Source of the DNA: Zootoca vivipara
Lineage: Eukaryota
Direction: 5' to 3'
Length of the DNA: 64,000 nucleotides
NCBI RefSeq assembly: GCF_963506605.1
Contig: NC_083288.1
Span: forward strand, 54,064,001 to 54,128,000
Part shown: one piece after another, positions 18,201 through 35,071 of the stretch
Position numbering within the stretch: position 1 is the stretch's first letter
Layout of the letters: each line of letters starts with the position of its first letter
The notes under the pieces: model-generated
Seen by the model: the letters and a program-made list of their open reading frames with translations, nothing else
Told to the model about the DNA's origin: nothing
The model's database searches: none
Translations under genes and position numbers: made by a program

Positions 18201-21200
18201 TTTCTGGGTTTCTGGTCTCCGTTTGTGGGGTGGAGAAAGTGGCAAGAGGGGAAAATGCGGGGGGGGGGGGTGTCTGTGTGCTGGGACTCAGAGGAGAAGC
18301 CCTTGGGGTGCCATGTTGGTGACCCCAAAGTAGGAGTTGGGGGGGAACTTTTTCACTGCTCTATTTCTCTCTGCGCCCCTCAGATCCCACAGAACCTGCC
18401 CTGCTCTGTGACGCTGCAGCCGGGTCCAGAGGACACAGGAAAAGTAAGGGGTTTCTGAAGGGGTGGGGGGCAGATTTTGGGGGTTCAGGGGAAAGAAAAG
18501 GATGCAGCCTTGTGGATTCTGCCCTGAAAGCAGCATTAGGGGCAGAGCTGCTTATGGGGCAGCTGGGGGGGGGGACACACGACAGGACCAGCAGTGTCAC
18601 TAAGGGACACCCCCCCCCCCGCTTTCCCCCTCCTCCAGGCTTGCGGTGTCGATTTTGAGATCCGGGCTTTTTGTGCCAAAATTCAAGATGAGAAGATTCA
18701 CAAAAGGTGAGCCCAACGTCTCAGGGCTGTTCTTCATGGGCAAACAAATCCTGTGGCTGAGAAATTGCAAAAAGCAAAACAGATGTATTGTTATTTTTGG
18801 TGTTATGTAGCCCAGTCTTCCCCGCCAAACCCCTGGGAGTTTTCCTAGAATGGTAGAGTTGGAAGGGGGCCCCCGGGGTCATCCAGCCCAGCCCCCGGCA
18901 ATGCAGGAACTGCGGTTGATCAGGGAAGGTTGTGGGGCAGGGAGATAAGGCTGTGTCCTTTTCTGTGAAGCCCCTTGCCCCCTTTTCCGGCTGCTTTGCC
19001 CATGGCAGGCTCTGGGTTCAGATCTCTGGCAACACGTCCAGTTCAGGCCAGAAAATACCTTTGTCCCAGAAACTGTAGGGAGAAGTGTTTGGCCCAACTC
19101 TGTATTTAATTCTTTACTATTTGTTTTTCCCCTCGATTTATATACTGGCCTTTATCATGACCCCCTTCTCTCGGACTTCCCTAACTCGCAGGGTGGTGGT
19201 GGGGGTGTGAAATGGGGAAGAGAGCTCCTTGCGATTCCTAAAGGTGGGCTGACGTTCATGCAATGGATTAATAGGGCTTTGAACTGCCCCCTCCTCACTC
19301 GCCTTGGGGAGAACCCAGGCATCCTGGGCCACAGCCAACTCCTCTTTCAGCCACTCTCCCTTCTTGCCCCCCACCCCACCCACAGGAATTCCGTCCGCCT
19401 GGTCATCCGGAAAGTTCAATATGCCCCGGAGAAGCCCGGCCCCCAGCCCATGGCCGAGACCACCCGCCACTTCCTGATGTCCGACCGCTCCTTGCACCTC
19501 GAGGCTTCGCTCGACAAGGAGGTATTTTTTTTGGGGGGGGTTGCGATGCACATAGGTGCATTTGCGGTGTGTGTGTGTGTGAAATGTGCTTCTGACTGAG
19601 ACCCTGCGGACCCCCGCCACCAGTATTGCAAGAGTCGCAGTAAGGAATCCGGGAGTCATAGCTCAACCCCCTGCAAGGCGGGAACCGCAGCTCAAGACTC
19701 CCTTGGCGCCCAGCCTCTGCTCAAAAGCAGCCCCAGTCTAGTCCCCATCTCCCCCACCCCCAGCAATAGCTGCCCCCTCCCCACAATGCCCCACCTGCAA
19801 GTTGCTGCAATGAGGGAAAGGCCCTTAAAGCCGATTAAAACACACCCCAGTATCCCCAGGCTGGTCTGAGCAAATCAATGCTTTTAAAAATGGTTGATAA
19901 TTTTGATTTTTTTAAATTGATATTTAAATTTGCTGGAAGCCACCCAGAGTGGCATAGAAATAATGTATTACTATTACTACGGTATAATTTTAGAACAATT
20001 TTGTTTATGAAAGAAAAGAGACGAAGAAAATATGTGAGAAAGAAGATGCAGAAATAAAATCAGTACATTTCCATACATTGAAATAAATGATGCTCTATCC
20101 CTGATAGAAGTGTAGCTATTCAAAACCTAATACGTTCTTTGCAAACTCATTCCAAATATCACTATATTAATCCAAACCAAGTATCTGTTGTCTGACTGTC
20201 AAGTTCCACACCGTAGGCGTTTAGTTCAAGAGAATATTCTCCCCGGAGTATTTTCGCTTTTAGGAAGCTCTGAAAAAAGGGTCAAGAGGCAGTGAGTTCC
20301 AAAGATGGATCTCTTTCAAATGCAGAACTCTTGGCAGCCATGGTTCATTTAGAGAGTCTCTGGGGTCACAGGCTTCAAGGTGGATGTTCCCCGCTTTTGA
20401 TTTGGGGGGAGGGTGTTGCGAGAGAGAGGCAACTGGTCCAAGGGGGGTCCTGGGAGAGTGGGCTGTGTCTTCCCTTTGAGGGCCCTTCCTTGGCCATGTA
20501 TCCTGACCCCCCCTTCTCTCCCCCCTCCAGCTTTATTACCACGGGGAGCCCATCAGCGTCAACGTTCACGTCACAAACAACTCCAGCAAAAGTGTCAAGA
20601 AAGTCAAGGTGTCCGGTAGGAAGGGGGGGTCCCTGCGGAGCTGGGTGGGGCCACCTTGGAGCATTTTTTGGGGGGGGTGCGTGGGGATGGAGCGGCCAGA
20701 TGAGGACCCCGCCGGAACACCCCCCCCAATTTGGCACTCCATGGACCTGGCTTCCTCTGGACAGTACCTGACGCTTTTCCTTCCTCCCGACCCTGCAGTG
20801 CGGCAATATGCAGACATCTGCCTCTTCAGCACAGCCCAGTACAAGTGCCCCGTGGCCCAAATCGAACAGGAGTAAGTATCCGGATTTGGAACTGGGGCTG
20901 GAGCGATGGGATGCGGGGTGTGTGTGTGTGATTTCGGAAAACGCAGCCTTGCCTTCGTCGTCTCCCCAAGTGTAGAAATGTTCTGGGACACCCTTCTCTC
21001 CCTAAAAGCTCCAAGGGAGACTCCACCCACCCCCAGGGGGAAGCTGCAGCACTGGGTGGAGCTGGGTGGGACTCCCAAGGCTCATCCAGCCCAACCCTCT
21101 GCAATGCAAGAGTCTCAGCCAATGGCGTTTTGCATTTTGGCACTGGCCTGACGTTGTCCCCTGCACCCCAGCTTGCAATGGGGGTTCGTGGAAGGGCTGT

Positions 21201-24200
21201 CACTCAGTGGTTAGAGCAGGCAGTTTCCGGGTTTGAGCCCCAAGGGAGGAGAGGTAATTCTGCATGACGTGGGCTGACAAACAGCCTTACTCGGTAGAAA
21301 GCAGCTTGCGGCGTCCCTGCGAGGTGGGCCGTGATGGGCTGGCAGGAATCTTGACGCCGCTCTCTCTCTCTCTGTGTGTCTCTGCTTGCCCTTGGCTTCC
21401 TCTGCCAGCGACCAAGTGGCCCCCAGCTCCACCTTCTGCAAGGTCTACACCCTCACGCCCCTGCTCAGCAACAACCGGGAGAAGAGGGGCCTGGCGTTGG
21501 ACGGGAAGCTCAAGCACGAAGACACCAACCTGGCCTCTTCCACCATGTGAGTCCTGCCCCCCCCCCTGCGCCCCCATTCCGGCAATTAAACACCCCTGAA
21601 CTCCCGGGCCGGCTGGCAGCAAATACGCCTTGGCATTGTTCTGTCATGGAAGGGGGGTGCCCAGGGGTCATCCAGTCCAACCCCCCTGCCGGGCAGAAAT
21701 TGCAGCTAAAGGATTCCAGGATTGCACAGGAACCAAACGGGGGTTGCAGCCCCCCCGGTGGGTGGGAGGGGGGGCAGGAGGTTCCTTGGGGGTGTGCTAA
21801 GAGGCAAGAGGGCAGGGAATATTGGACTTTGCAGAGCTGCTCACCCCAGGATTGATGGCGCTCCGTGTAGCAAGGTGCTCTCCTTCTGGCTGCCCTGGGT
21901 GCAGGCTGCTGACTGGAGGGGGAGACCCAGTCAGCATACGACACCTGTGCTGGCTGCCAATTGGCTCCCGGGCCGAGTCCAAGGTGTTACTCTTAGTATA
22001 TAAAGCTCTTAACAGGGGGTTGGACTAGATGACCGCCGGGGATCCCTTCCAATTTGACGAGGCTGTGATTCTGACAACTTGGGGGCAGCTTATCTGCAAG
22101 ATTGCTTGACCACCCTTATTTTTATGCATAAGCCGCCTTGAGTCCTGTCAGAGGAAAAGGTGGGGCATAAATACATTAATATTAGTTATTATTAATAATA
22201 AATGTGGCAGCATCGACACTTTCGAACCCCTGCCTCTTGATATCCTCCCGCACAACTGCCTTCACTGTATTCTTTTTGGTGCCTGCTGAACACGTTCCCG
22301 TTTGAGACAAGTTTGCACAAGTTTCAGTCTATTCTGCTGCAGTTTTAAATTGTGCTTGTAGTGTGTTCCATTGTGGTTTTGCAATTTTTGTGACAGTTTT
22401 ATGGTTTTGATAAACCTCTCTGAGGCATTTTCCCTTTGCAATCAAGCGGTATACAGTGGTACCTCAACTTACAAACGACTTAAAAACCGAATTTTTCAAC
22501 TTACGAATGGGGGTAATGGCCACGCGCTTACGAATGTCTCGACATCCGGAAAAAACCCGCAGCGGTTTTAGATAGGGTTGCTTCGACTTACGAATTTTTC
22601 CGTTTTCAATGCATTCCTATGGGAAATTGCGTTTCCAATGGCCTTTTTCAACGTACGAATTTTTCGACTTATGAAGGTGCCTTCGGAATGGATTAAATAC
22701 ATAAGTCGAGGCACCACTGTATAAATTTTATGAAGTAAATACAGTGGTCGTTTCAGTTGGATTAATCTGGCAATTAGCTGCTGCTACTGCTCTGAATCTT
22801 CTTTTCGGAGGGGTGGAGCCACTGGGGGTGAGTTCATGGCACCGAGGAGGCGGAAGGGACCCCCAAAAGTTTGGGTAAAAAATGTGAGCGTAGGGAAAAG
22901 GGGAGGCATTGTTCTTTGCAGGGTCCTTGGGGTGTTTCTAGGTCAGAACAGCCTCCCCATTTCTTTTTCCTTGGCATTGCAGCGTGAAGGAGGGTGCCAA
23001 CAAGGAGGTCCTGGGCATCCTGGTCTCCTACCGGGTCAAGGTCAAGTTGGTGGTGTCCCGGGGAGGGTAAGTATGAATATCGGGTGGGTTGCTCTTCTTC
23101 TCTCGTTGTCGCCATGCCCCCCCCCAAATCCCAACTCGTCTGTTGCAAAAGAGGTGTTTGGAAGAGAGACTCCTGCTCTCTAGTAGCAGAGTTAAGCACA
23201 ATGGTTCACTCCAAGCGCATTTAAATTTGGTTAGATTTTACATTGGCTCTCGCCCACTTTCAAACAAACACCTAGGCTAGAATAAATCACAGGCACTTGG
23301 CATTGCAGATAAGTGGATATTTTGGGGGCTTTGCAGAAGTTACAGCCAACAAGTTGCAGTAGTAAAAAAAAGGGGGGAGGAGTTTCCAATCGATCTAAAA
23401 AGAAGAGAATAAAAAGGATCGTGCAATATTTGGGGTTTGCAAAGATGCAAAATCTCCCCAAAAAGATGTAAAATCTCCCCAAGGAGTTGCAGCAAACCAA
23501 GGATTTGAAGTAGGATGCCAATGGAAGATAAGTCGGGAAGTCTGTGTAAGATTAAAATAAGAGTTGTATAGATGCAATGTGCCAAACGAAAAATGATTAA
23601 ATAACTAAATATGAACACCTAAAAAATAAAAAAGGCATCTGTTCAGCTACTGTGAGGGCAGGATGCTGGACGAGCCTCATCCAGCAGCCAGACATTTCAG
23701 ATGACAGTATGGAGCTTCCAGGTCCAGAGGCAGTATATCTCAGTTCCCAGGTTCTATGAGGCATTTGGCCCTTTGAGGCCAGGATGCCTTGGGCCTGATC
23801 CCGCTTGCAGGCTCTTCTCATGATCTTCTCCTCCCCCGCCCCCCAGGGATGTTTCCGTGGAGCTGCCTTTCGTCCTCATGCACCCTAAGCCACCCGACCA
23901 GGCCTCGCCCAAGTTGCAGCCTCAGCTGGGTAAGTCTCTGAATGGGAGTGCAAGCCTTCTCCTACGGGATGCCACCCCAGAGGCAGCTGTGCTCGTTCCG
24001 AGTGGAGGGTGGGGTGGGAGACGTTTCATGGGTCAAAAGGGGCGCCTTGCCTTGGAGAACGAGGAAACTCACGCTCCCCGTTTCCCTTCCAGCCGCCCCC
24101 GAGACGGACGCCCCGGTCGACACCAACCTCATTGAGTTCGAAACGAAGTAAGACAAGTCTGACCCTTTCCCTGGGGGGCTCAGAGGCCAGCACCCACAAG

Positions 24201-25314
24201 GCCCTGCTCTCGGGGGGGGGGGAGGTAGGAGGTAGCCAGGCTGTGCCCAAAGGGTCTGCCTCTCTCTCTCTCTCTGCCTAGTTATTTCCCACTCAGCCCA
24301 ATTATTTAGTATTATTATTGACTTATTTTTATTCCCAGCATAAGAAGGCAAGATGGAAACCCAAAATGCATAATAAAAACAAAGCTAGCCAATAAGCTGC
24401 CTCCCCCTCTAGCAACAGATCGAGGCTCTTAGGATTATTACATTTATGCCGGCCCTTTCCTCCAAGTTGCTCAAGGACATGTGCCTTCTTCTCTCCCTCC
24501 CCTTTTTATTCCCCCCCAACAACAACCCTGCGAGGGAGGTTTGGGGCCCAAGTCACCCAATGGGCTTCATAGCCGCTTTGAACCGGCGTCTCCCCAGTCC
24601 GAGTCTAGAACTTACAACACATTTCCGTCTTCCATTCCACAAGTTGGAGTGGCTTCTTTTTTTATATAGGGCAGGGCGGAGCCCCCAAACCACCTTTGAG
24701 GACTTCTGTGGGGTGACTGCATTGCCATCTAACACTTGGGGGGTGTTCAACTGGGGTGGGGGGTTTAAAAGTGGAGAATCTTGGTCAGCGGTTGGGGCAT
24801 GGAAAGGAGAACCCACAAGGAGGGGGGGGACAGCTGCAAGGGCCCCCAAACCCACCACCCACCCCCGTGTCCAGGGCCCAGGAAAGGAGCTGGACCTTGG
24901 GGTCTTGCACAGGGAGCTCCCAGTGTGGTGCAGTGGTCGGAGCACCCGGGTTCAAATCTCTGCTTGGCTGTGCTGCTTGCCTGGGGGTCTGGAGGGGGCC
25001 GGTTTCTCCCTTTCAGCCCTAGCCTACCTGGCAGGGTTGTTGCTTCACGCACCACCTTGGAGGAAATGATGGGATGTAGGAATGCGGGGAAAGAAGCAGA
25101 TCTTTTACAGGTGAAAGAAAAAGAAAATCCACCATTTTTGTGCATATCCAAAGCAGCCTGACTGTGTCTCCCTGTTCTCTCCTTTCCTTCCCCCCCCCCC
25201 CACAAAAAACAACCCAGCTACGGGCAGGACGATGACATTGTATTCGAAGACTTTGCCCGCCTGCGCCTGAAGGGGCTGAAGGACGACAAGGAAGACGACG
25301 ACCATTTTTGCTAG
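9119..25314 (+). CDS. ARRB2: Beta-arrestin-2 (arrestin-3), 15 coding exons, 411 aa
   Basis: Exons 9119-9141 (MGEKAGTR), 11773-11803 ([10 protein letters not shown]), 14374-14434 ([15 protein letters not shown]), 15585-15629, 17688-17884 ([26 protein letters not shown]), 18384-18443, 18639-18706, 19386-19521, 20531-20615, 20799-20871, 21409-21546, 22983-23066, 23847-23929, 24093-24147 (TNLIEFET clathrin box), 25218-25314 ([17 protein letters not shown]2 motif, TAG). Total 1236 nt, all GT-AG and in frame. Confidence 0.98.
10810..10937 (+). mobile_element. tRNA-Lys-derived SINE with CR1-type tail
   Basis: GTAGAGCACGAGACTCT..CTCAGGGTTGTGAGTTCGAGTTCCACGTTGGGC followed by TTCCTGCATTGC..CTTCCAGCTCTAGATTC. 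Confidence 0.75.
12780..13006. mobile_element. Penelope-derived inverted-repeat element (hammerhead cores on both strands)
   Basis: Same family as 840-1055. CTGAAGAAGTGTGCATGCACACGAAAGCTCATACC at 12885-12919, with a mutated inverted copy at 12829-12868. Confidence 0.8.
13347..13488. other. Assembly gap in ARRB2 intron 2
   Basis: Run of Ns. Confidence 1.
15020..15215. mobile_element. Penelope-derived inverted-repeat element (mutated hammerhead core)
   Basis: TAGCACCTTAGAGACCAACTAAGTTTGTTCTGGGTATAAGC and its inverse. Core CTGAAGAAGTGTGCATGCACACAAAAGCTTATAC at 15083-15116. Confidence 0.75.
15459..15548. mobile_element. 90-bp MITE, TIR CATAGCTGCCAAGTT, 6-bp TSD
   Basis: Perfect 15-bp TIRs; CTTACC direct repeat on both flanks; near-identical copy at 59682-59772. 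Confidence 0.85.
16822..17168 (-). mobile_element. Sauria SINE, full length
   Basis: AAAGGTAAAGG (ACCTTT tail) at left end, GGGACGCAGGTGGTGCTGTGG head on the minus strand, TSD TACTATCAGTA. Confidence 0.9.
22451..22722. mobile_element. Tc1/mariner (pogo/Tigger-like) MITE
   Basis: TA-CAGTGGTACCTCAACTTA ... TAAGTCGAGGCACCACTG-TA termini. Confidence 0.8.
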
Positions 25315-26198
25315 GGAGGGAGAAACGCCCCCCCCTCGCCACCACAGGTCCAGCCAAGTTTGGGGGGGGGGAGCGGAGAGAGAGGAAAGAGCTGAGAAAT
25401 GCCCCCCCCCCCGTATGGATGTCGCCTCATCCTCTACTCCCCCCTCCTTTCTTATAGGAGCCATCACCCCCCCCCTTTGCCTTGTGTCTTCATGCTGTAT
25501 GGGGGGGGGGCTTTTAATGTGACTAAAAACGGAGGGGGGAAGGGGCCACCGCTTCACCCCCCCCCAGCTTTTAATCTTTACCTGCTGCTGCGTATCTTCT
25601 CCACAGATGGATTTTAACGCCACCGTCCTCGTCCGTCCCCCTCTCCCAAATTTTTGTCTAACGCACTGGAATCATATATTGGGCATTATCGTCTGACTGT
25701 CGTATCCCCACCCCGAAAAAAGGACCACGTTGTGTGTGTCTAATCTCTCTGGGCAACCCCCCCCACCTGCTCTTTATATAAATGTTTTATTTTTAAATGC
25801 TATTTTAACTGGTTAGGGAAAACAATTGGTCAATTGAACTCTCTCCTCTTTCCCTTAAAAAAAAATCCATTGGGGCTGGGAGGCATCTTCTGTCTCCCCC
25901 CCCTCTCTTTTTCAACAAAGCCCCCCACCCACCCACAAGGAGATATGCCTCTGCTGGCCATGGGGAGTGTGAGCTGAGCCCCACCCCCACTGCCTGGGAT
26001 TGGGGACCCCTCCCCGTGCCCCCAAATGCAGAAGGGGGCAGGTGTGTGCCAATGTCTCTGTGCTTTGTGCCCAGTCCCCCCACCTTTGCAGGGCTGCCCC
26101 TCTGTACAAACAGGTGCGGGGCAGGCAATGCGTGTAAAAAGAAGTAAAAAAAGGCCATTATTATTTCTTATATTGTCTGAGCAGAGAGCAAGAAATGA

Positions 26199-26204
26199 AT
26201 TAAA
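26199..26204 (+). terminator. Candidate ARRB2 polyadenylation signal (ATTAAA)
   Basis: ATTAAA ~885 nt after the ARRB2 stop; a second ATTAAA at 26250-26255. Confidence 0.5.
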
Positions 26205-26230
26205 AAGTGGTTAACAGATGCCTGGAGGTT

Positions 26231-26236
26231 TTTATT
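26231..26236 (-). terminator. Candidate polyadenylation signal (AATAAA) of the ATG16-like gene
   Basis: TTTATT on the + strand, ~440 nt downstream of the predicted TGA at 26677-26679. Confidence 0.55.
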
Positions 26237-26676
26237 AAGTGGTTTGAGCATTAAAAACGGTGGAAAGGGGGCTCCTGTGAAAATAGCACCCCCTGCCAGA
26301 GATTCTCAGATCTGCAGCAAGGACTCCCCTCTTGCTGCACCGCTGTGGGGCTAGACGCTCCCTGACCCCCCCCCCCCCCCGCAGAAGAAGAGCCATGTGG
26401 GGCTTTCGATAGCTGCCCATCCGGGGGGGGGGCTGAGGCCACACCACCCCCAAAAACTTGTAGACTCCTGGGTTGTGGGGTGTGGCTAGCTCCCTTTTCC
26501 TGAGCAATTCACAAAACCAGCACGCTCTCCGTGACATGCAGTCGCGGCTGGATTTCTCCCCCCCCCCACCCTGAGGTCCAGGTAAAGAACCTGGGTGCAA
26601 TTGCAAGCGTGCTGTGACCACTGAGCAAGCCCACCGACGGCCGTGCAGATGTTCCTCGGAAAGGGCCAGGCTGCAT

Positions 26677-29627
26677 TCACAGGGCGGGGGCTGCCTCAGG
26701 AATCGGACCTGTGGCGAGAAAGAGAGGAGCCAAGTGAAGGACATGGAGAAGGTTCACTGCCCCCCCCCAACTCCCCAGGAAGGAGGGACAAGGGTACCTG
26801 CAGCCCCGCGCTGACCCAGAGGGGATGAGGCCTGGGGAGGGCTGGACTCGGCTCGCCCTGCTTCTGAAACCTAGAAGCAGAGGAAGGAGGAGCTCTAGGA
26901 ACTTCAGGAATGAGGAGTTGGGAGGGACCCCAAGGGTCCTCTAGTCCAACTTCTGCAATCCAGGAATCGCAACTCAGGAATCCCCGACAGGTGGCCCCCA
27001 AAACAGCTTGAAGACCTCCAACAAAAGACAGGAAGGTTCTTCCTGATGTTAGCTGGAATCTCCTTGCCTCAAGTCGTCTCCTCTGGAGCAGGAGAAAACC
27101 AGCTTGCTCCGTAGCAAAAGGAAGAACAAGGAAACAGTGGGGTCACTTAGAGGAGAAGATGGTGAAATGCGAACAGGGGACAGAGAAAGGGCAGAACTCC
27201 TCAATGCCTTCTTTGCCTCAGTCTTCTCCAAAAAAGAAAACAACGCCCGACCTGAAGAATATGGAGCAGATGATTCAGCAGGGGAAACACAGCCCAGAAT
27301 AAGTAAGGAGGTAGTACAAGAATACTTGGCTAGTTTAGATGTATTCAAGTCTCCAGGGCCAGATGAACTACATCCAAGAGTATTAAAAGAACTGGCAAAG
27401 GTGATTTCAGAATCACTAGCAATAATCTTTGGGAATTCCTGGAGAACAGGCGAAGTTCCAGCAGACTGGAGGAGGGCAAATGTTGTCCCTATTTTCAAAA
27501 AGGGGAAAAGAGAGGACCCAAACAATTACCGCTCAGTCAGCCTGACATCAATACCAGGAAAGATTCTAGAGCAGATCATTAAGCAAACGGTCTGTGAGCA
27601 CCTAGAAAGGAACGCTGTGATCACTAAAACTCAGCATGGGTTTCTGAAAAATAAGTCATGTCAGACTAATCTGATCTCATTTTTTGACAGAATTACAAGC
27701 CTGGTAGATGAAGGGAACGCTGTGGATGTAGCCTATCTTGATTTCAGCAAGGCCTTTGACAAGGTGCCCCATGATATTCTTGTAAAGAAGCTGGTAAAAT
27801 GCGGGCTAGACAATGCTACCATTCAGTGGATTTGTAACTGGCTGACTGACTAAACCCAAAGGGTGCTCATCAATGGCTCCTCCTCATCCTGGAGAGTAGT
27901 GACTAGTGGGGTGCCACAGGGTTCTGTCTTGGGCCCAGTCTTATTCAACATCTTTATCAATGGCTTGGATGATGGGCTTGAGGGCATCCTGAGCAAGTTT
28001 GCAGATGACACCAAATTGGGAGGGGTGGCTAATACCCCAGAGGACAGGATCAGACTTCAAAATGACCTTAACAGATTAGACAACTGGGCCAAAGCAAACA
28101 AGATGAATTTTAACAAGGAGAAATGTAAAGTACTACACTTGGGCAGAAAAAAAATGAAAGGCACAAATACAGGATGGGTGACACCTGGCTTGAGAGCAGT
28201 ACATGTGAAAAGGATCTAGGAGTCTTGGTAGACCACAAACTTGACATGAGTCAGCAGTGTGATGCAGCAGCTAAAAGAGCCAATGCAATTCTGGGCTGCA
28301 TCAATAGGAGTATAGCATCTAGATCAAGGGAAGTAATAGTACCACTGTATTCTGCTCTGGTCAGACCTGACCTGGAATACTGTGTCCAGTTCTGGGCACC
28401 ACAGTTCAAGAAGGATACTGACAAGCTGGAACGTGTCCAGAAGAGGGCAACCAAAATGGTCAAAGGCCTGGAAACGATGCCTTATGAGGAACGGCTTAGG
28501 AAGCTGGGTATGTTTAGCCTGGAGAAGAGAAGGTTAAGGGGTGATATGATAGCCATGTTCAAATATATAAAAGGATATCATATAGAGGAGGGAGAAAGGT
28601 TGTTTTCTGCTGCTCCAGAGAAGCGGACACGGAGCAATGGATTCAAGCTACAAGAAAGAAGATTCCACCTAAACCTTAGGAAGAACTTCCTGACAGTAAG
28701 AGCTGTTCGGCAGTGGAATTTGCTGCCAAGGAGTGTGGTGGAGTGTCCTCCTTTGGAGGTCTTTAAGCGGAGGCTTGACAGCCATCTGTCAGGAATGCTT
28801 TTAAGATGTTTCCTGCTTGGCAGGGGGTTGGACTGGATGACCCTTGTGGTCTCTTCCAACTCTATGATTCTATGATCTTTCATGGAACAGCCCATCAGAT
28901 ACCAGATGATGGTTCTCATCTCTCCTCCCAGTCTCCTCTTTCCCAGGCTAAACATCCCCAGCTCCTTCCCCCATTTCTCACAAGGCCTGGTTTCCATCTT
29001 GGCTGCCCTCCTCTGCCCATGTTCCAGCTGGTCAACATCCTTCTTAAACTGGACTCCAGGTGGGGTCTGACCAAGGCAGAATAAAGCGGTATTATTCCTT
29101 CTCTTGATCTGGACACTCGACTCCTGCTAGAATAGCATTCACCCTTTCTTGCTGCTGCATCACGCCATTCGCTCATGGTCTACCAAGTCCCCTTGATCGT
29201 TTTCAAGATCACAATAAACACAAGATCAAATGGTACGAGAATGCATTTTGAAGCTTTCCAAGAAACCTTCTGCCCTGGAAGACTATCGCCTGAAAGGTGG
29301 AGCACAGCTTACTTGAATAAATACACACACACACCCAGCCACAACCCCACACCCACCTTTGGGCTGCTCCCACCTTCTACACTGGTTTCCTCGCAAGACG
29401 TGCTGAAGGTGTTGTCACTTGGGGACGATTCTGCAGCTGCCGGCCTGGGAATCCTGTGTCGAGAGAGAGGGGCAGACTGTGTTTGGGGGAGGCAGTGGGA
29501 TGCCCCACTTTCATAAGAAAAAGTGGGGGGCTTTCAGAGCAAAGGCAGCTGCTGTTCAGAAGGCAGGGCCAGCCTCTGCAAACCGGCTCTTCTTAGAAAA
29601 CGACACCCTGCTTTCCCCACAGAGGGA

Positions 29628-29685
<58 letters not shown>

Positions 29686-30085
29686 CTATTTATACCCCAT
29701 CCACCTGACTGTGAAAAACAAAACATTCTATCTAGTCTGTTCAGTCTAGACTCTCCTCCCTTGGAGGTTTTTAAGCAGAGTCGAATTGAGTGATTTCAAT
29801 ACCACTTAATATTTTAAATACATCTCTAAGCGGTCTACCAAAAACAGGCAACTGAAACTGTTGCAAAAATACAGATAGGCTTGAGTCTTTTTACAATAAT
29901 TCAAAGGTTTGGTGGCCGCCTGCCATGAATGTTTCAGTTGCAATTCCTGCATTGAAGGGGCTGCACCAGAGCCCCCCCCCCCGCTGCCCTTTCCCGCCTT
30001 TCAATTCTGTGATTTATTAATTGCATTTTTATCCTGCTGCTGCTGTTTTTTGTTTTTAAGACCTAAGGACCAGACCCAGGATGAT

Positions 30086-30137
<52 letters not shown>

Positions 30138-33100
30138 CGGTCAGCCAAGATGCAGGATCCCAGTGTAACAGACACAGGATAATTCTATTATTATTGGTAC
30201 TACTACTAATTTTGAGGGCCTGGTCCATAGAGAAGGGCTGGGAAGCTTCAGGGGCCATCATCGGTTTCCCACTGAAAACCAGAGGTGCTTGGGGCCCAGG
30301 GACGGTTGAGGAAAAGCCAGGTGCCCCCAGGACTCCCCGGATTGGCACCGTGATAAAGGGTGAGGTGCAGAATGCCCACCTCCCTTCTCAAAGCAACCCC
30401 AACACTACAGCTACCTGGAGCTGGGAATGGCTCCCCCCTCTCTATAAGGGAGGCCTTGAAGCAGTTGCCCCCTCCCATCACAAAGCAGGGGACAGCAAGG
30501 CACCCCAAAACCTTGTGCCAGGACTGATAACGCCCCCATTTAAGGCCCCAAGGGGAGCCCTGCTGGATCAGGCCAATGAGGGCCCATCATCCTGTTCTCC
30601 CAAGGGCCAAATGCACCAAAGAACTGAGGAATCAAGGTAGACAGCCTCTGGAGCTGGAGGTTCCACAAGGACATCAGGGCAAGCGGGATCCAAGCACAAG
30701 GGCAACTCTCCCCTCCTGCAGCTTCTGGCAACTGGGATTCAGAGGTACAGCCGCCTGCCATTGTGGAGACGGAGCAGGCCCACCGATGGCCCATGAATTT
30801 GCCTTGTCTCCCCCTTCCACCGCTGCCCCCTGCGGGAGGGAGTTCCACAGTTCAATTACGTGCTGTGTGCCAGAGTGGCCCAGGGAGCTTTGAGGCCGAG
30901 CCCCCCTAGAGAGAGAGAGAGACACCTGCTTGCCCTCCCTCAGAAAAAGGAGACAGACTCACATGCCGGCCACTTCCCTTGCCTCCTGCAGCTTCTCTCG
31001 GAGGCACTGGACTCTCCGCTGATACCTGGGGGTGGGAGGAAGCCATCATTAACAAACAATTAAACATTAATAGAATTTATATATACGTACTATATGTACG
31101 CTCAGGAACAACATACCCAAGGACCACCTCTCTCCCTATGAACCATCCCAGATCCTCATCTGAGGCTTTCTTCGTGTGCTGCCTCCATGAGAAATCCAGA
31201 GGGTGGCAATAAGATAACATGGCCTTTTCTGTGGTGGCTCCTCATTGGTGGCATGCTCCCCCCAAAGTGGTTCGCCTGGCGCCTTCATTGTACCTAGGGC
31301 CTCTGTATGTCCGTATTTTCCCGGGACACGTCCGGAAATCGGGCTCTCTGAATGGCACCTGGACTATTTTCAATTGGGGCCTAAAAATGTATTCATTTTG
31401 GGGGGCGGGGGGAGAGACATTAAAAAAAAAAAGCCTCCCCCCCATCACACATTTTTAGGCACCAGGCAGAAACTCCCCTCTTCTCCCAGGCCCTTGGCTA
31501 ACTAACACCCTGTGTCTATTGCCTTTGTGTTTTTATCTTGTACAGTGGTGCCTCGCTAGACGAAATTAATTCGTTCCACGGGTCTTTTCTTATAGCGAAA
31601 AATCCGTCTAGCGAATCCCATAGGAATGCATTGATTTTTTTTGATTTTTTTTTTGCCCATAGGAACGCATTAATTGAATTTCAATGCATTCCTATGGGAA
31701 ACCGCGATTCGTAAAACGCATTCGTCTAGCGAGGCAACCTCTGCTCGAAAAATCCTTTCGTTAAGCGAAAATTTCGTTAAGCAGGGCATTCGTTAAGCGA
31801 GGCACCACTGTATTTTATTCTGTGATCTGCCCAGACACCTTATGACAAAGGGCAGGATATGAATTCTAACTACAATCGTACCTTGGAACCCAAACATCTT
31901 GGCACTCGAACGTTTTGGCTCCCGAACGCCGCAAAACCGGAAGTGAGTGTTCCGGTTTGCGAACGTTCTTTGGAACCCGGGCGTCCGACGGGGCTTCCTG
32001 CAGCCCATTGGAAGCCGTGCCTTGGATTCCGAATGTTTTGGAATGGATTCCGTTCAGCTTTCAAGGTACGACTGCACCTGCACAGCTACACGCAGGAGCA
32101 TCTTTCTGGATAGAGCCCCTCCGCTCACCGGTCGCGCTCCTCGTTGGCCTGGTTCATGCGGCCGGCCTCCAGCGCCTTCTCCTGCACCCAACGCGCCTCG
32201 AGGTCCTCCCTTTTCCGCTGCGCCTCCTGCATGAGTCCCTGCGCCTCGGCCAGCTCCCGGCGCAGCCCCTCAGCCTCCTGGAAAAGCGCCCAGGCCTGGC
32301 ACTGTGCCTCCTCATGCTGGCGGGTCAGAGCAGCCAAATCCTGGGCCAGGCACCTCATCCTGCAGAGGGGCAGAAAGCACCGGATCCCAGAGCATGGAGG
32401 GACACCCCGGGGTCATCCAGACCAACCCCCGGCAATGCAATATTTCATTTTCTAACATTTTGTGGGCATGGTGCCCGGCCTCCTGGTGAATTTTGCAGCA
32501 AAGACGGGGAAGGAAGGAAGAAAATCCGCCGGAACGCAACGCTGGCGAACCAGATGCACCCCGGCTTCTTTAAAAGGCCGAACCCCATTCCCCTCCCACA
32601 ACTGGGGGGGCCAGAGAGACCAAGACTCCTACTTTGCCCGCTGCTCCTTGTTCTCTGCCTCCGTCTCCCGCAGGACGTCTGTCAGGAGGGCGACCTGCTG
32701 CCGCAACTGCAAAGCAAGCACAGCGTTTATTCATTTCTCTCCCAGATTTGCACACGACTAATTTTGTCCCGGGAGCAGAGGTCGGGTGGCTGTCTGTCAG
32801 AGATGCCAGCCTTGAGATTCCTGCACTGCAGGGGGGTTGGCCTAGATGACCCCTGGGGAAGCCCCTCTCGCTCTACAATTCCATAATCTGACGAAGCCAC
32901 AGGAGATGGACCTGATCCAGGCCCTTGCGGAGCCTCAACTCACCTCCTCCCTCTCTCTCCGGACATCGATCAGCTCCATCTCCTGCTGCACCTGGATGGA
33001 GGCCAGTTTCTGGGGGGGCCTGGAAAAAGCCAGAAGAGGACCCCCCAGTTCAGCAAACGCCCATCCTTCCCCCCCCCCCCATGCCAGCACCTCACCCTGG

Positions 33101-34814
33101 TGCACTCACCGGCAGGACCCCACGGCCGCCGGCCACTGCCCCTCCTCCGCCGCTGCCAGGAGGGTCTGCATAGCATCCAGGCAGCCATGCAGCTTTTCAT
33201 CTGGAAGAGCAAGAAGGAGCCTCTCAGGAGGGGGCTGGGAAGGAAGGGGGTCTCTGGGAAAAGGGGGAGAGAGCAGGAGCTATTAGAAAGGGCAACCCCA
33301 CCCCAGGCCTCCACTGCCCCGCTTGCCTCTCAAAAGGCTGAGGAGAGTAAGCAACTTCTTCACGCTGCATGCCATTAACCTGCGGAACTCCCTCCCACAG
33401 GAGGTAGCAAATGGCCACCAACCTGCATGGCTTTAAAAAGAGAATCGGGCACTTTCGCAGCGGAGAACGGGCCTATCAGTGGCTACTAGCGAGGATGAAG
33501 GCCCTTTGCTGGAAATTATGGGGAGAGCTGCTCTTGTGTTTGAATCCTGACAGGCGGCTTTCCATCAGAGGAGTCTGGGTGGCTGCTGCGAGATCCGGAA
33601 GTTGGGCTCGGTGGCCCTGCTTTGGCCCCTCCAGCAGGTGGTTCTTATGTTCAAGTCAATGGTTGCCAGCAGAAGGGGCCCTACGGGTCATCCAGCTCAA
33701 CCCCCTGCGGTGCAGGAATCACAGCTAAGGAAACACGCAAGCCAATGGGTGCTGTGGTTCAGCCTTCACCCACTTGGGGGCTACTGGGAGTTGTAGTCCA
33801 GCAACCTCTGGAAGGCACCAGGGAGGCGAGGGCTGCTGTAGCAGTTGCAGGATTCTGCACCAGGCAGAGCGGCAGGAAGATGAGCTCAAAGATCTTATTC
33901 CTACTTTATGGCAGCGAAGCGGCCCTCCAGTCCTTTCTGCCTGGCCCTCGAAACTCTTGCTAGGCTACACGCCTCTCTGCTCCTGCTTTATAGCCTCTCA
34001 GCATTTTTGTCTAACCAGAAACTATCCTCAAGCTCCAAAAGATGCGGGCCCAGGGTGTGGCAGCGGCAAAAAAGGCCAATCCCCACACCAAGGATCCTTG
34101 GGAAAGGAATTGCAAACAAAAAACATGCTGGTATAATTAATGAGGTTCTGCAAATCAATGATGTGACTGTATCTCTGTGTGGTTCTGGTTGTCTCACCTG
34201 AAAAAGGATATTGCCAAGTTGGAGAAGGTTCAGAAAAGGGCCACCAAAATCACTATTATGATCAAGGGGATGAAGCAACTCCCCTTTGAGGGAAGGTAGC
34301 AGCCTTTGGGGCTTTTAGTCAAGAGTAAAGTTGATGAAGAGGCAGCATAAAGGAAGTTTGTAAAATGATTAATGTCACAGAGAAAGTGGAGAGAGGAGAG
34401 TTTTTCTCCCCCTTTGGACACAGGAGGAGGGCAACCAAGGAAGCTGAATGGCGGGAGTGGCGGCTGGAGAAGGATGAATGGAGGAGAGGGTTCTGCTAGC
34501 AGGTGGCCCCTGGAGGGGAATGTGGCCCCAGGGCGACCCCTCCCCCGCAAGGAAGAAGCCCCAACGAAGCCATTCCGGGCGGGGTGGGCTGCGCTGAGCC
34601 GGGAGGCTCCCCGGCTGGCTTTCGGGCGCCTTGTGGCGGGGAGTTCCCTCGACTCTCTCCCGCTCCCCCCCCCCCGACTCCGCGGACGGGGCGAGGGGGC
34701 TCTGCACGCGCGCAGGGGCTCACGTCGCTCCAGCAGCACCCGCAGGCCCCGCGCGCGCCGCTCCCGCCGCTGCAGCTCCGCACGCACATGCTGCCGCCAG
34801 CCAGCGCCAGGCAT
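26677..34814 (-). CDS. ATG16-family protein lacking the WD40 domain (ATG5-binding helix + coiled coil + short S/P-rich tail), ~275 aa, 9 exons
   Basis: Exons 34724-34814, 33110-33200, 32944-33019, 32633-32706, 32129-32359, 30963-31025, 29357-29453, 26798-26870, 26677-26708. All GT-AG, phases compatible, 828 nt open. Protein: [39 protein letters not shown]...[46 protein letters not shown]...[41 protein letters not shown]...APAL*. It resembles ATG16L1 segments WKRHISEQLRRRDR, HQEELTELHKKRGELAQLV and RWMAEKAQEANRLNAENE. Exons 1-6 are firm; exons 7-9 rest on splice signals and frame only. Confidence 0.85.
27111..28875 (+). mobile_element. 5'-truncated young CR1 LINE (ORF2 RT region; one stop and one frameshift) in intron 7 of the ATG16-like gene
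   Basis: [71 protein letters not shown]. Stop at 27851-27853, frameshift in the A run near 28150, ATTCTATG-type tail. Confidence 0.97.
28876..29180 (-). mobile_element. Older CR1 fragment (its other half lies at ~26930-27110)
   Basis: Minus translation [21 protein letters not shown] and [14 protein letters not shown]. Confidence 0.75.
29629..29683. repeat. (ATT)n microsatellite
   Basis: ~18 perfect units. Confidence 0.95.
30087..30136. repeat. (CA)n microsatellite
   Basis: ~25 units. Confidence 0.95.
31541..31812. mobile_element. Tc1/mariner (Tigger-like) MITE
   Basis: TA-CAGTGGTGCCTCGCTAGACG ... CGTTAAGCGAGGCACCACTG-TA. Confidence 0.85.
31871..32075. mobile_element. Degenerate Tc1/mariner-type MITE
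   Basis: TACAATCGTACCTTGG ... CAAGGTACGACTGCA inverted termini. Confidence 0.6.
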
Positions 34815-35071
34815 GGCCCCGCCCGCTTTCCGGGTCACGTGTGCACCGCCGAACGAAATGGATGACGGGAGATGGAGTTCTAAAGGAATTTATTTAAATG
34901 CACCCCGCCTCATAGAGGCGCATGCGCACGCCTCCCGGCGGAAGCCACCCCGGGTCACGTGCCGCTAATAGAGCGCAGGGCACTCAGCGAGGCGCACGCG
35001 CACGCGTTCCGGCGGAGGAGAGGGCGGGGCTCAGACCAGTAGCTCGCGGACGGGAGCCGGGAAGGACCGAA
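34815..35071. promoter_or_regulatory. Bidirectional CpG promoter of ATG16-like gene/MED11 with two CLEAR/E-box motifs
   Basis: 257 bp between diverging ATGs. CCGGGTCACGTG occurs twice (GTCACGTG at 34834-34841 and 34954-34961). Also GCGCATGCGC 34918-34927, ETS-like CGGAAG ~34939, GC box ~35021, and YY1-like AAATGGCGGC at the MED11 start. Confidence 0.8.

What the first reader, a model, noticed from the sequence alone, without database searches (positions are those of the whole stretch)
26677..34814. A third vertebrate ATG16 paralog: WD40-less, yeast-like architecture, between ARRB2 and MED11
Seen in sequence: nine minus-strand GT-AG exons (91, 91, 76, 74, 231, 63, 97, 73, 32 nt) join into an uninterrupted 275-aa ORF. 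It has a CpG promoter upstream and AATAAA downstream. The ORF track shows only fragments of it. Established: ATG16L1 consists of an ATG5-binding helix, a membrane-binding helix 2, a coiled coil and a C-terminal WD40 domain. WD40 is dispensable for canonical autophagy but required for LAP/CASM; yeast Atg16 lacks it. Here [12 protein letters not shown] fits W-x3-I/V-x3-L-x2-R, and LRVLL mirrors helix-2 [19 protein letters not shown] keeps the K/A/N positions of the RAB33B-binding segment, and [10 protein letters not shown] resembles the WIPI2-binding LQKELAEAAKE. Intron phases 1,2,0,2,2,2 and the 74-nt exon 4 match ATG16L1 as I recall it. After the coiled coil there is only a ~65-aa S/P-rich tail and no room for WD40 exons before the ARRB2 3' end. 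Inference: a natural delta-WD ATG16 that could build an autophagy-only ATG12-ATG5-ATG16 complex, or tune CASM by heterodimerising or competing for ATG5. It may exist as an automated LOC model, but I know of no description of it.
Basis: partly seen in the sequence, partly recalled or inferred. Interest (0 to 1): 0.93.

Follow-up and report, generated by a model that had tools for sequence, protein, structure and literature searches.

The report
Reptile ATG16 paralog without WD40
The common lizard, like other lizards, snakes, turtles and alligators, has a transcribed extra copy of the autophagy gene ATG16 that lacks the WD40 propeller; it keeps the ATG5- and RAB33B-binding residues but not the WIPI2-binding ones, and no paper in the searched library describes it.

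Summary
Nine minus-strand GT-AG exons join into a 275-aa ORF. It is letter-for-letter NCBI's automated model XP_034991247.2 (Zootoca vivipara LOC118094737). RNA contigs from two studies show the predicted junctions of introns 1-6.

It is a true ATG16 homolog. Single sequences stay below Pfam's ATG16 cut-off, but a family profile hits the ATG16L1 N-terminal region colinearly (E 9.5e-17; hhalign 98.2%). There is no WD40 domain and no WD40-like exon in the window.

Orthologs were found only in squamates, turtles and crocodilians, so "vertebrate" is too broad. Their tree follows the species tree, so the gene predates the squamate/turtle-crocodilian split.

The ATG5-binding motif, the helix-2 hydrophobic residues and the RAB33B triad (K/A/N) are kept. 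The RAB33B triad is invariant in 22 of 22 orthologs. Both WIPI2b sites are degraded: D164 is replaced, a heptad is deleted, and E226 is mostly R. An "autophagy-only E3" is therefore less likely than an ATG5/RAB33B-binding regulator.

The arrestin linkage (SAG-ATG16L1; ARRB2 next to this gene) favours an old ohnolog; the scan noted this linkage before, on this same stretch. No paper in the searched library describes the gene.

The parts
34724..34814 (-). Exon 1, coding part (ATG at 34814-34812). Encodes the ATG5-binding-type motif W6-x3-V10-x3-L14-x2-R17 and the helix-2 residues L24/L27/L28.
   Evidence: The joint 33200->34724 is seen in RNA contigs. Residue conservation.
33110..33200 (-). Exon 2 (91 nt): end of the N-terminal helix and the variable linker.
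   Evidence: Joints 33200->34724 and 33019->33110 are seen in RNA contigs; an alternative acceptor at 33253 is also seen.
32944..33019 (-). Exon 3 (76 nt): start of the coiled coil. Skipped in some transcripts, which shifts the frame.
   Evidence: Joints 32706->32944 and 32706->33110.
32633..32706 (-). Exon 4 (74 nt): coiled coil.
   Evidence: The joint 32359->32633 is seen in X1 and X5.
32129..32359 (-). Exon 5 (231 nt): coiled coil, including R167-W168-x2-E171-K172-x2-E175-A176-x-R178-x-N180, the RAB33B-site equivalent.
   Evidence: The joint 31025->32129 is seen in X1 contigs and in 2 raw reads of X10.
30963..31025 (-). Exon 6 (63 nt): end of the long helix. It is the equivalent of ATG16L1 WBS1, with the hydrophobic positions kept and the acidic ones not.
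   Evidence: The joint 29453->30963 is seen.
29357..29453 (-). Exon 7 (97 nt): disordered S/T-rich acidic tail with the small conserved motif S-x-S-C-E-E.
   Evidence: The acceptor is confirmed by RNA. The donor rests on the NCBI model, and alternative donors occur in other NCBI isoforms.
26798..26870 (-). Exon 8 (73 nt): poorly conserved tail. Present in isoforms X5 and X6 only.
   Evidence: No RNA evidence could be laid here.
26677..26708 (-). Exon 9, coding part, with the TGA stop at 26679-26677.
26231..26236 (-). AATAAA poly(A) signal candidate, 440 nt after the stop.
34500..35500 (.). CpG island and bidirectional promoter shared with MED11 (MED11 ATG at 35072, + strand). It holds two GTCACGTG (CLEAR-type half-site) motifs at 34834-34841 and 34954-34961.
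   Evidence: (3 matches in the window against 0.37 expected).
17693..25314 (+). Neighbouring beta-arrestin gene (best match beta-arrestin-2), convergent with this gene. Its stop codon is at 25312-25314.

Best explanation
This is LOC118094737 of the common lizard Zootoca vivipara. It is a conserved, transcribed gene for a roughly 275-aa member of the ATG16 family that consists only of the N-terminal half of ATG16L1.

The protein has three parts. First, an N-terminal helix carries the ATG5-interacting motif and the hydrophobic helix-2 face. Second, a single long helix of about 145 residues forms the coiled-coil region and keeps the RAB33B contact residues. Third, a disordered acidic Ser/Thr-rich tail follows. 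There is no WD40 propeller.

The gene was already present in the common ancestor of squamates, turtles and crocodilians and has been inherited vertically.

Most likely mechanism (inferred, not shown): the N-terminal helix binds ATG5 or the ATG12-ATG5 conjugate, and the coiled coil binds GTP-RAB33B. The family has lost the WIPI2b-binding determinants and the WD40 domain that senses the V-ATPase. It therefore probably cannot by itself direct LC3 lipidation to phagophores or to stressed single membranes. Instead it would act as a regulator. It could divert or titrate ATG12-ATG5 and/or RAB33B away from ATG16L1, or bring ATG12-ATG5 to RAB33B-positive Golgi-type membranes.

Confidence by part: about 0.9 for identity (a real ATG16-family, WD40-less, reptile-wide gene), about 0.65 for ATG5 binding, and about 0.4 for the regulator reading. 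The single figure given averages these.
For: Gene and transcript:
- ORF and splice sites.
- Identical to an NCBI model.
- Spliced RNA contigs for introns 1-6 from two studies.

Homology:
- A profile of 12 squamate orthologs hits PDB ATG16L1 5npv_B at E 9.5e-17, positions 6-228 against 6-250.
- The 17-sequence profile hits a bird ATG16L1 at 4e-19.
- hhalign against 9 ATG16L1 sequences gives 98.2%, E 4.4e-14, residues 4-206 against 11-230.
- ATG16 is the top Pfam family for 9 of 10 members.

Architecture:
- The AlphaFold2 model has a helix at 4-49, a helix at 63-206 with pLDDT above 90 over most of it, and a disordered tail.
- No WD40 hit in Pfam or by tblastn over the whole window.

Residues, numbered as in the papers read:
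- AFIM W/V/L/R is kept in 21-22 of the 22 orthologs aligned, depending on the position (Pelodiscus P0069 is the exception).
- F32/I35/I36 equivalents are L/L/L or V.
- K198/A202/N206 equivalents are invariant in 22 of 22. The K198A, A202W and N206K mutations abolish RAB33B binding (PMC7395093).
- The D164 equivalent is R/G/T/A. D164R abolishes WBS2 binding (PMC9977175).
- The I171-E177 heptad is deleted.
- The E226 equivalent is mostly R.

Constraint:
- The family clade has 100/100 support, and its inner topology follows the species tree.
- Mean pairwise identity is 60-65% in the N-terminal helix and the RAB33B segment, against 25-30% in the tail.
- RNA-contig differences in the exons are 5 synonymous and 4 non-synonymous.
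Against: - No binding was measured or modelled for ATG5 or RAB33B.
- The fifth AFIM position (Q/E) is not kept; it is A21 in Zootoca.
- Alignment inside a coiled coil can slip by a heptad, so the loss of WBS2 is an inference from two concordant alignments.
- Zootoca itself keeps E at the E226 position and A at the A227 position, so some WBS1 binding in lacertids is not excluded.
- Expression in the two raw-read RNA libraries is very low.
- The C-terminal exons 8 and 9 are not confirmed by reads.
Confidence: 0.55

Rival explanations
1. One reading: a yeast-like, stand-alone 'delta-WD' ATG16 that builds an ATG12-ATG5-ATG16 E3 able to carry out canonical autophagy but not CASM.
For: - The architecture matches yeast Atg16: an ATG5-binding helix plus a coiled coil, with no propeller.
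- The AFIM and the helix-2 hydrophobic residues are kept.
- Zootoca keeps L200, E202 and A203 at the L224, E226 and A227 positions of WBS1.
- Two GTCACGTG motifs sit in the promoter.
Against: - Canonical autophagy needs WIPI2b binding. In PMC9977175 the D164R/L224Q double mutant cannot rescue.
- In this family the D164 equivalent is never acidic. It is R in Zootoca.
- The heptad with I171 and A175 is missing.
- E226 and E230 equivalents are mostly R and A/G.
- The region equivalent to the FIP200-binding stretch (229-242, numbered from memory) is not conserved: identity in the tail is about 30%.
Confidence: 0.15
2. It works mainly as a heterodimer partner of ATG16L1. The resulting complexes would have only one propeller and one set of WIPI2 sites, which would shift the balance between autophagy and CASM. 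This parallels the ATG16L1-ATG16L2 heterodimer reported in a 2026 preprint.
For: - The coiled coil is homologous to and colinear with that of ATG16L1.
- Paralog heterodimers have been reported for ATG16L2 (bioRxiv 10.64898/2026.06.01.729256).
- Complex prediction on the Emydura pair (ATG16L1 70-240 with the short paralog 55-205) gave weak support. The score was 0.47 and the best of 3 controls was 0.00.
- That mark was reached by 51 of 78 solved complexes and 2 of 108 mismatched pairs. At 0.60 or under, however, it was reached by only 5 of those 78 solved complexes and by all 4 mismatches that passed.
- The runs agree in at least 17% of their contacts, and the partner's pLDDT is at least 79.
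Against: - By the tool's own calibration, a weak pass is more often wrong than right.
- The controls were not coiled coils, and any two long helices tend to be laid side by side.
- The family has a 7-residue deletion (squamates) or a 14-residue deletion (turtles, alligator) in the coiled coil relative to ATG16L1.
- Identity to ATG16L1 is only 26-29%.
- Homodimerisation was not compared.
Confidence: 0.2
3. It is a decaying or functionless relic: a truncated duplicate transcribed from MED11's bidirectional promoter, with no selected protein function.
For: - Expression in the two raw-read libraries is low.
- Frame-breaking isoforms exist, with exon-3 skipping and alternative acceptors.
- The 3' end is variable.
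- The gene evolves fast compared with ATG16L1.
Against: - The ORF is intact in more than 25 species of three reptile orders.
- Invariant residues cluster at known functional sites of ATG16L1.
- Conservation is strongly uneven along the protein.
- The gene tree follows the species tree.
Confidence: 0.05
4. It is an unrelated coiled-coil protein that resembles ATG16 only through heptad composition.
For: - Pfam ATG16 scores are below the gathering threshold in every member.
- The exon-5 phmmer search did not reach ATG16L1.
Against: - The match is colinear from end to end. It includes the non-coiled N-terminal motif and eight identical invariant residues in the RW-EK-EA-R-N segment.
- hhalign gives a probability of 98.2%.
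Confidence: 0.02

Closest known systems
ATG16L1 (vertebrate autophagy-related 16-like 1), N-terminal region 1-250
   Same: - The order of modules is the same: AFIM helix, helix-2 hydrophobic face, linker, long coiled coil, RAB33B site, short amphipathic stretch, acidic S/T linker.
- W13, I17, L21 and R24 have equivalents.
- R193, W194, E197, K198, E201, A202, R204 and N206 are identical.
   Different: - Identity is only 26-29%.
- There is no WD40 propeller and no long linker with T300.
- The loop before the coiled coil is shorter.
- One heptad (squamates) or two heptads (turtles, alligator) are missing.
- The acidic WIPI2b contacts D164, E226 and E230 are not kept.
- It evolves much faster than ATG16L1: tip branches are 0.03-0.66 against 0.003-0.07.
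ATG16L2
   Same: It is a diverged vertebrate ATG16 paralog. ATG16L2 is reported to bind ATG12-ATG5 yet be dispensable for canonical autophagy and excluded from WIPI2 membranes (papers cited). That is the same predicted weakness as here.
   Different: ATG16L2 keeps the WD40 propeller, which the 2026 preprint finds critical for its VAIL/CASM role; this protein has none. No ATG16L2 sequence could be fetched, so no direct comparison was made.
Yeast/fungal Atg16
   Same: The domain architecture is the same: an Atg5-binding helix plus a dimeric coiled coil, with no propeller.
   Different: - It is not orthologous in any special sense. The lizard protein is closest to vertebrate ATG16L1, and its short form is best read as a secondary loss.
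- The PROPPIN (Atg21/WIPI2) site that yeast Atg16 shares with ATG16L1 WBS2 is the very part that is not conserved here.
TECPR1 (AFIM-containing alternative partner of ATG12-ATG5)
   Same: It carries the same ATG5-interacting motif, W-x3-I-x3-L-x2-R (PMC4453027). It is a precedent that ATG16L1 is not the only way to use ATG12-ATG5.
   Different: It is unrelated outside the motif. TECPR1 is a large multi-domain, membrane-damage-sensing protein and is not a coiled-coil dimer.

Membership tests
ATG16 family (Pfam PF08614 ATG16) | Score at or above Pfam's gathering threshold (33.7 bits). | tested here: not met
   Zootoca scores 11.3 bits (E 0.39). Eight of the other nine orthologs tested score 13.6-24.8 bits, and Pantherophis has no hit at E up to 1. 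ATG16 is nevertheless the best family for 9 of 10. Exon by exon, only exon 5 hits, at 13 bits. Some turtle and gecko members carry a precomputed PF08614 hit in the database tables.
ATG16 family | Significant, colinear homology to the ATG16L1 N-terminal region at profile level. | tested here: met
   hmmsearch of profile A1 against the PDB: 5npv_B at E 9.5e-17 (6-228 against 6-250), 6y09_C at 2.5e-08 and 6sur_I at 3.4e-05. hhalign of A2 against A3: 98.2%, E 4.4e-14. Profile A2 hits a bird ATG16L1 at 4e-19 in a database of 5.8 billion sequences.
ATG16 family | ATG5-interacting motif W-x3-I-x3-L-x2-R-x3-Q/E in an N-terminal helix (PMC4453027). | tested here: met
   W6, V10, L14 and R17 are present in Zootoca, and 21-22 of the 22 orthologs aligned keep each of these positions. 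The fifth position is A21, not Q/E. The stretch is predicted helical, 4-49. Binding itself was not tested.
ATG16 family | Binds ATG5 and supports ATG8/LC3 lipidation as part of the E3-like complex. | not testable with these tools
This needs co-IP and rescue assays.
ATG16 family | Dimeric coiled-coil domain. | tested here: inconclusive
   There is one continuous helix at 63-206 with pLDDT above 90 over most of it, homologous to the ATG16L1 coiled coil. Self-pairing was not modelled. Pairing with ATG16L1 got only weak support: 0.47 against 0.00 for the best control.
Metazoan ATG16L1/ATG16L2 type | C-terminal seven-bladed WD40 propeller. | tested here: not met
   No WD40 family at E up to 1 in 10 members. 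hhalign aligns only to ATG16L1 residues 11-230. tblastn of three full-length ATG16L1 proteins finds no significant WD40-like segment in the 64-kb window. The neighbouring arrestin gene's stop codon is 1.36 kb beyond this gene's stop.
ATG16L1-like function: WIPI2b recruitment | WBS2 residues D164, E165 and I171, and WBS1 residues L224, E226, A227 and E230 (PMC9977175; Dooley 2014). | tested here: not met
   - D164 becomes R/G/T/A.
- E165 is kept in squamates only.
- The I171-E177 heptad is absent in all 22.
- E226 is mostly R and E230 is A/G.
- Only L224 and, in part, A227 are kept.
ATG16L1-like function: RAB33B effector | K198, A202 and N206 at the RAB33B interface. Mutating any of them abolishes binding (PMC7395093). 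| tested here: met
   K172, A176 and N180 are invariant in 22 of 22 orthologs. R167, W168, E171, E175 and R178 are also invariant and match ATG16L1. Binding itself was not tested.
Fungal Atg16 type (WD40-less) | Short protein with an Atg5-binding helix, a coiled coil and the PROPPIN (Atg21) site, and no propeller. | tested here: inconclusive
   The architecture matches, but the PROPPIN-site equivalent is not conserved. The closest relatives by sequence are vertebrate ATG16L1 proteins.

The most novel reading that the evidence does not exclude
The gene is a true third ohnolog ('ATG16L3') from the vertebrate whole-genome duplications. It would have been kept beside ARRB2 just as ATG16L1 sits beside the arrestin SAG. 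In this reading it survived only in non-avian reptiles, after losing its propeller and its WIPI2 sites. It would then be a natural WD40-less, WIPI2-blind module that binds ATG5 and RAB33B. Such a module could re-allocate the ATG12-ATG5 conjugate between canonical autophagy, CASM and a RAB33B/Golgi-directed route, either alone or as a heterodimer with ATG16L1.
Probability: 0.3. Interest if true: 0.75.

Novelty: new variant of a known kind. Interest (0 to 1): 0.62.

Why it matters
ATG16L1 decides where LC3/ATG8 is lipidated. Its coiled-coil region reads WIPI2 and RAB33B for canonical autophagy. Its WD40 propeller reads the V-ATPase for CASM/LAP. All of this domain logic has been worked out with engineered truncations in mammalian cells.

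Here evolution has kept, since before squamates split from turtles and crocodilians, a natural protein that has only the ATG5-binding and RAB33B-binding parts. Studying it would show what such a module does in a whole animal. It would also test whether paralog choice allocates ATG12-ATG5 between pathways, as a 2026 preprint now proposes for ATG16L2.

It also corrects the picture of ATG16 as a two-member family in vertebrates. A 2026 survey of ATG gene duplications included a tortoise that has this gene, and the green anole in an older annotation, yet treats ATG16 as a pair.

The limits are clear. The gene is absent from the bird and mammal protein sets searched here, so its medical relevance is indirect, and nothing about its biochemistry has been measured.

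Tried and rejected
- Exon-by-exon Pfam scan. Only exon 5 touched ATG16 (13 bits), which is too weak to decide.
- Exhaustive phmmer with exon 5 alone. It found 18 reptile-family representatives. Every one that carries a species name is a squamate; six have no name. It also found two unrelated repeat proteins. It reached neither turtles nor ATG16L1, so a single exon is too short for distant relatives.
- First read-laying run failed on the server. The retry worked. Only 29300-34900 could be laid, so introns 7 and 8 were not checked.
As a result there is no synteny in alligator, turtle or anole, no ATG16L1 gene structure to compare intron positions and phases, and no ortholog coding DNA for dN/dS.
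- The third homolog search, with a bird ATG16L1 N-terminus, listed only amniote ATG16L1. No ATG16L2, amphibian, fish or invertebrate sequence was obtained. The tree therefore cannot date the duplication or say which paralog is closest.
- tblastn for hidden WD40 exons. There were only chance-level hits (E 0.4 or worse), one of them inside an arrestin intron.
- A fold search of the model was not run. A single long helix would match any coiled coil.
- The joined 275-aa model was assembled only inside a script, to check the frame. It was never sent to a search as typed letters. Whole-protein searches used P0026, the identical database entry returned by the listing of cluster members.

Full report
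**What is in the sequence.**
- On the minus strand between 34814 and 26677 there are nine exons of 91, 91, 76, 74, 231, 63, 97, 73 and 32 nt.
- Every intron starts with GT and ends with AG behind a pyrimidine tract. The phases are 1,2,0,2,2,2,0,1.
- The join is 828 nt, giving 275 codons plus TGA.
- The joining was done only inside a script, to check the frame.
- The exon-5 search then led to a database protein, P0026 = XP_034991247.2, 'autophagy-related protein 16 isoform X6' of Zootoca vivipara LOC118094737.
- From there on that database entry was used. The typed or joined model was never sent to a search.

**Transcription and splicing.**
- Contigs of two runs from two studies (X1 and X5; their RNA nature is a guess on record, but they carry spliced forms) show CT..AC joints at exactly the predicted borders of introns 1 to 6.
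- Two raw RNA-seq reads of X10 support intron 5.
- The same data show exon-3 skipping. The exon is 76 nt, so skipping it shifts the frame.
- They also show an alternative exon-2 acceptor at 33253 and some unspliced RNA.
- Expression in the two raw-read libraries is very low.
- Introns 7 and 8 lie outside the 6-kb stretch that could be laid. The last two exons rest on the NCBI model, and NCBI lists several other 3' ends.
- Upstream lies a CpG island at 34500-35500 (GC 0.70, CpG o/e about 0.9-1.1).
- This island is the bidirectional promoter shared with MED11. The MED11 ATG is at 35072 on the + strand, and Pfam Med11 matches its next exon.
- The promoter holds two GTCACGTG motifs. The window has 3 matches against 0.37 expected.
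- AATAAA follows the stop at 26231-26236.
- The other neighbour is a beta-arrestin on the + strand. It matches Arrestin_N, and its best PDB matches are beta-arrestin-2.
- The arrestin stop codon is at 25312-25314, only 1.36 kb from this gene's stop.

**Is it an ATG16?**
- Single sequences are not convincing. Pfam ATG16 gives 11.3 bits for the lizard protein. Eight of the other nine orthologs tested give 13.6-24.8 bits and one gives no hit, against a cut-off of 33.7. It is still the best family for 9 of 10.
- phmmer against the PDB gives ATG16L1 at E 2.4e-4.
- Profiles settle the question. A profile of 12 squamate orthologs matches the ATG16L1 N-terminal fragment 5npv_B at E 9.5e-17, colinear from residue 6 to 228 against 6 to 250.
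- A 17-sequence profile finds a bird ATG16L1 at 4e-19 in a database of 5.8 billion proteins.
- hhalign against nine amniote ATG16L1 proteins gives 98.2% probability (E 4.4e-14), residues 4-206 against 11-230, and nothing against the propeller.
- AlphaFold2 predicts a helix at 4-49, a short loop, one helix at 63-206 with pLDDT above 90 over most of it, and a disordered tail.
- No WD40 family appears in any member. tblastn with three full-length ATG16L1 proteins finds no WD40-like exon in the 64-kb window.
- Homology to the N-terminal half of ATG16L1 is therefore shown, and the lack of a propeller is real.

**Who has it.**
- All named relatives are non-avian reptiles.
- The squamates are lacertids, an amphisbaenian, anguid, cordylid and skink lizards, anoles, agamids, a varanid, snakes and geckos.
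- The others are six or more turtle genera and two alligator species.
- NCBI calls them variously 'autophagy-related protein 16(-1)-like', 'uncharacterized protein', or wrongly 'golgin' and 'eIF3 subunit A-like'.
- In alligator and in two turtle genera (Emydura and Chrysemys) the same species also has a normal 607-aa ATG16L1, so this is an extra gene.
- No bird or mammal member appeared, although the same database holds over a hundred bird and many mammal proteomes.
- Absence from amphibians and fish is not established, because the searches were limited by shared words.
- In a maximum-likelihood tree the short family is one clade (100/100). It splits into squamates (99/97) and turtles plus alligator (92/66).
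- Within squamates, geckos, anoles, agamids, snakes and lacertoids are each recovered.
- This is vertical descent from the common ancestor of living reptiles. 'Vertebrate' in the title is therefore too broad on present evidence.

**Residue-level reading.** Numbering comes from papers read here, and conservation was counted over 22 orthologs.
- The ATG5-interacting motif W-x3-I-x3-L-x2-R-x3-Q/E (PMC4453027) is present as W6, V10, L14 and R17 in Zootoca. All 15 squamates and 6-7 of the 7 turtle and alligator sequences keep each position. Only the last position is lost.
- The equivalents of F32, I35 and I36 are L24, L27 and L28. These are the helix-2 membrane-binding residues, numbered from my own knowledge of Lystad et al. 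2019.
- The RAB33B interface residues K198, A202 and N206 each abolish binding when mutated (PMC7395093). Their equivalents K172, A176 and N180 are invariant in 22 of 22.
- So are R167, W168, E171, E175 and R178, which are identical in ATG16L1.
- By contrast, the WIPI2b sites described in PMC9977175 are degraded.
- In WBS2, D164 is replaced by R/G/T/A. It is R in Zootoca, the same change as the D164R mutant that kills binding. E165 is kept only in squamates. The heptad with I171 and A175 is deleted.
- In WBS1, L224 is kept and A227 mostly so, but E226 is mostly R and E230 is A or G.
- Two independent alignments agree on this (with 64 in support).
- Conservation along the protein is uneven in the same sense. 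Identity is 60-65% in the N-terminal helix and the RAB33B segment, and 25-30% in the tail.
- Nine differences between the RNA contigs and the reference in exons split 5 synonymous to 4 non-synonymous. That is a small sample, compatible with purifying selection.

**Mechanism.**
- Shown: the gene, its transcripts, its homology, its architecture and the pattern of kept and lost residues.
- Inferred: the protein binds ATG5 (or ATG12-ATG5) and RAB33B. It is blind to WIPI2b and, lacking the propeller, to the V-ATPase signal.
A regulator would divert or titrate ATG12-ATG5 or RAB33B, or take ATG12-ATG5 to RAB33B-positive membranes.
- A heterodimer with ATG16L1 is a live alternative, given the 2026 preprint on ATG16L1-ATG16L2 heterodimers.
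- The one complex prediction allowed used the Emydura ATG16L1 coiled coil and the Emydura short paralog. It gave only weak support: score 0.47, best of three controls 0.00.
- That mark was reached by 51 of 78 solved complexes and 2 of 108 mismatched pairs. At 0.60 or under it was reached by only 5 of those 78 solved complexes and by all 4 mismatches that passed.
- The runs agree in at least 17% of their contacts, and the partner's pLDDT is at least 79.
- The controls were not coiled coils, so I give this little weight.

**Origin.**
- The stem between the short family and ATG16L1 is about 2.3 substitutions per site. Root-to-tip distances inside the reptile clade are 0.6 to 1.0. That suggests either an old split or strong acceleration after duplication.
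- ATG16L1 lies next to the arrestin gene SAG, with conserved synteny (PMC3782427). This gene lies next to a beta-arrestin.
- ATG16L1 and ATG16L2 are regarded as products of the vertebrate genome duplications (PMC13020874).
- A late partial copy landing by chance beside another arrestin seems unlikely. I therefore favour an old ohnolog that lost its propeller and was lost in other lineages, at about 0.6-0.7.
- That origin needs several independent losses and was not tested here. The position of ATG16L2 near ARRB1 is from my memory only (no paper found).

**Literature.**
- Nothing was found for 'ATG16L3'.
- The 2026 survey of ATG gene duplications treats ATG16 as a pair and does not mention reptiles. 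Its species list includes Gopherus evgoodei, which has this gene, and Anolis carolinensis in an older annotation. It also says short sequences were removed.
- Another word search found nothing relevant.
- The gene is annotated by pipelines but, as far as this library shows, not described.

**What could not be done.**
Synteny in other reptiles, comparison of intron positions with ATG16L1 and dN/dS were therefore left out.
- No ATG16L2, ATG5 or RAB33B sequence was available.
- The assembly gaps in the window (N runs) were left untouched.

**Verdict.** This is a real and conserved WD40-less ATG16 paralog of non-avian reptiles. It is a new variant of a known kind and of moderate to good interest. 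Its biochemistry is untested, and its likely role differs from the one first proposed.

Noticed in passing
window 31541-31812 (intron 5): A repeat of about 270 bp with terminal inverted repeats (ACAGTGGTGCCTCGCT... at both ends), which looks like a MITE. Depth in all four runs is hundreds to thousands of times that of the exons. Reads run on into unlike sequence at both ends, and there are opposite-strand joints. The local CpG o/e is 1.37.
   Followed up: partly
window 27104-28875, + strand (intron 7, antisense to the gene): Open reading frames of 249, 118 and 233 aa that look like LINE reverse-transcriptase fragments by eye (e.g. ...[29 protein letters not shown]...). This retroelement insertion makes up most of the 2.5-kb intron 7.
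   Followed up: no
window 34834-34841 and 34954-34961: Two GTCACGTG (CLEAR-type half-site / E-box) motifs lie 120 bp apart in the 257-bp stretch between this gene's ATG and MED11's ATG. The window has 3 matches against 0.37 expected. The same feature was flagged as scan note s1-852173.
   Followed up: partly
window 32706->33110 and 33253->34724 (RNA joints): Alternative splicing: exon 3 (76 nt) is skipped, and there is an exon-2 acceptor 53 nt upstream. Both shift the frame. NCBI isoforms that start at Met41 or Met111 would lack the ATG5-binding helix.
   Followed up: partly
protein residues about 220-232 (exon 7, window 29357-29453): A small motif in the otherwise unconserved tail, S/T-x-S-[CSW]-E-E (TSCEETS in Zootoca), recurs in lizards, snakes, geckos and turtles. 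It aligns with T247-S255 (TSDxxEETS) of ATG16L1. Its function is unknown; it may be a phospho-acidic patch.
   Followed up: no
window 25312-26679: The arrestin gene and this gene converge, with only 1.36 kb between their stop codons. Their 3' UTRs probably overlap or abut (minus-strand AATAAA at 26231-26236 and 25786-25791).
   Followed up: no
window 29621-29694 and 30079-30144 (intron 6): Long (ATT)n and (GT)n microsatellites. The reads tool skipped them as repeats.
   Followed up: no
alligator orthologs P0063 and P0073: Both alligator proteins lack a further stretch of about 11 residues of the coiled coil, including the otherwise nearly invariant W134. The gap is not a whole number of heptads. 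It could be an isoform or a lineage-specific deletion.
   Followed up: no
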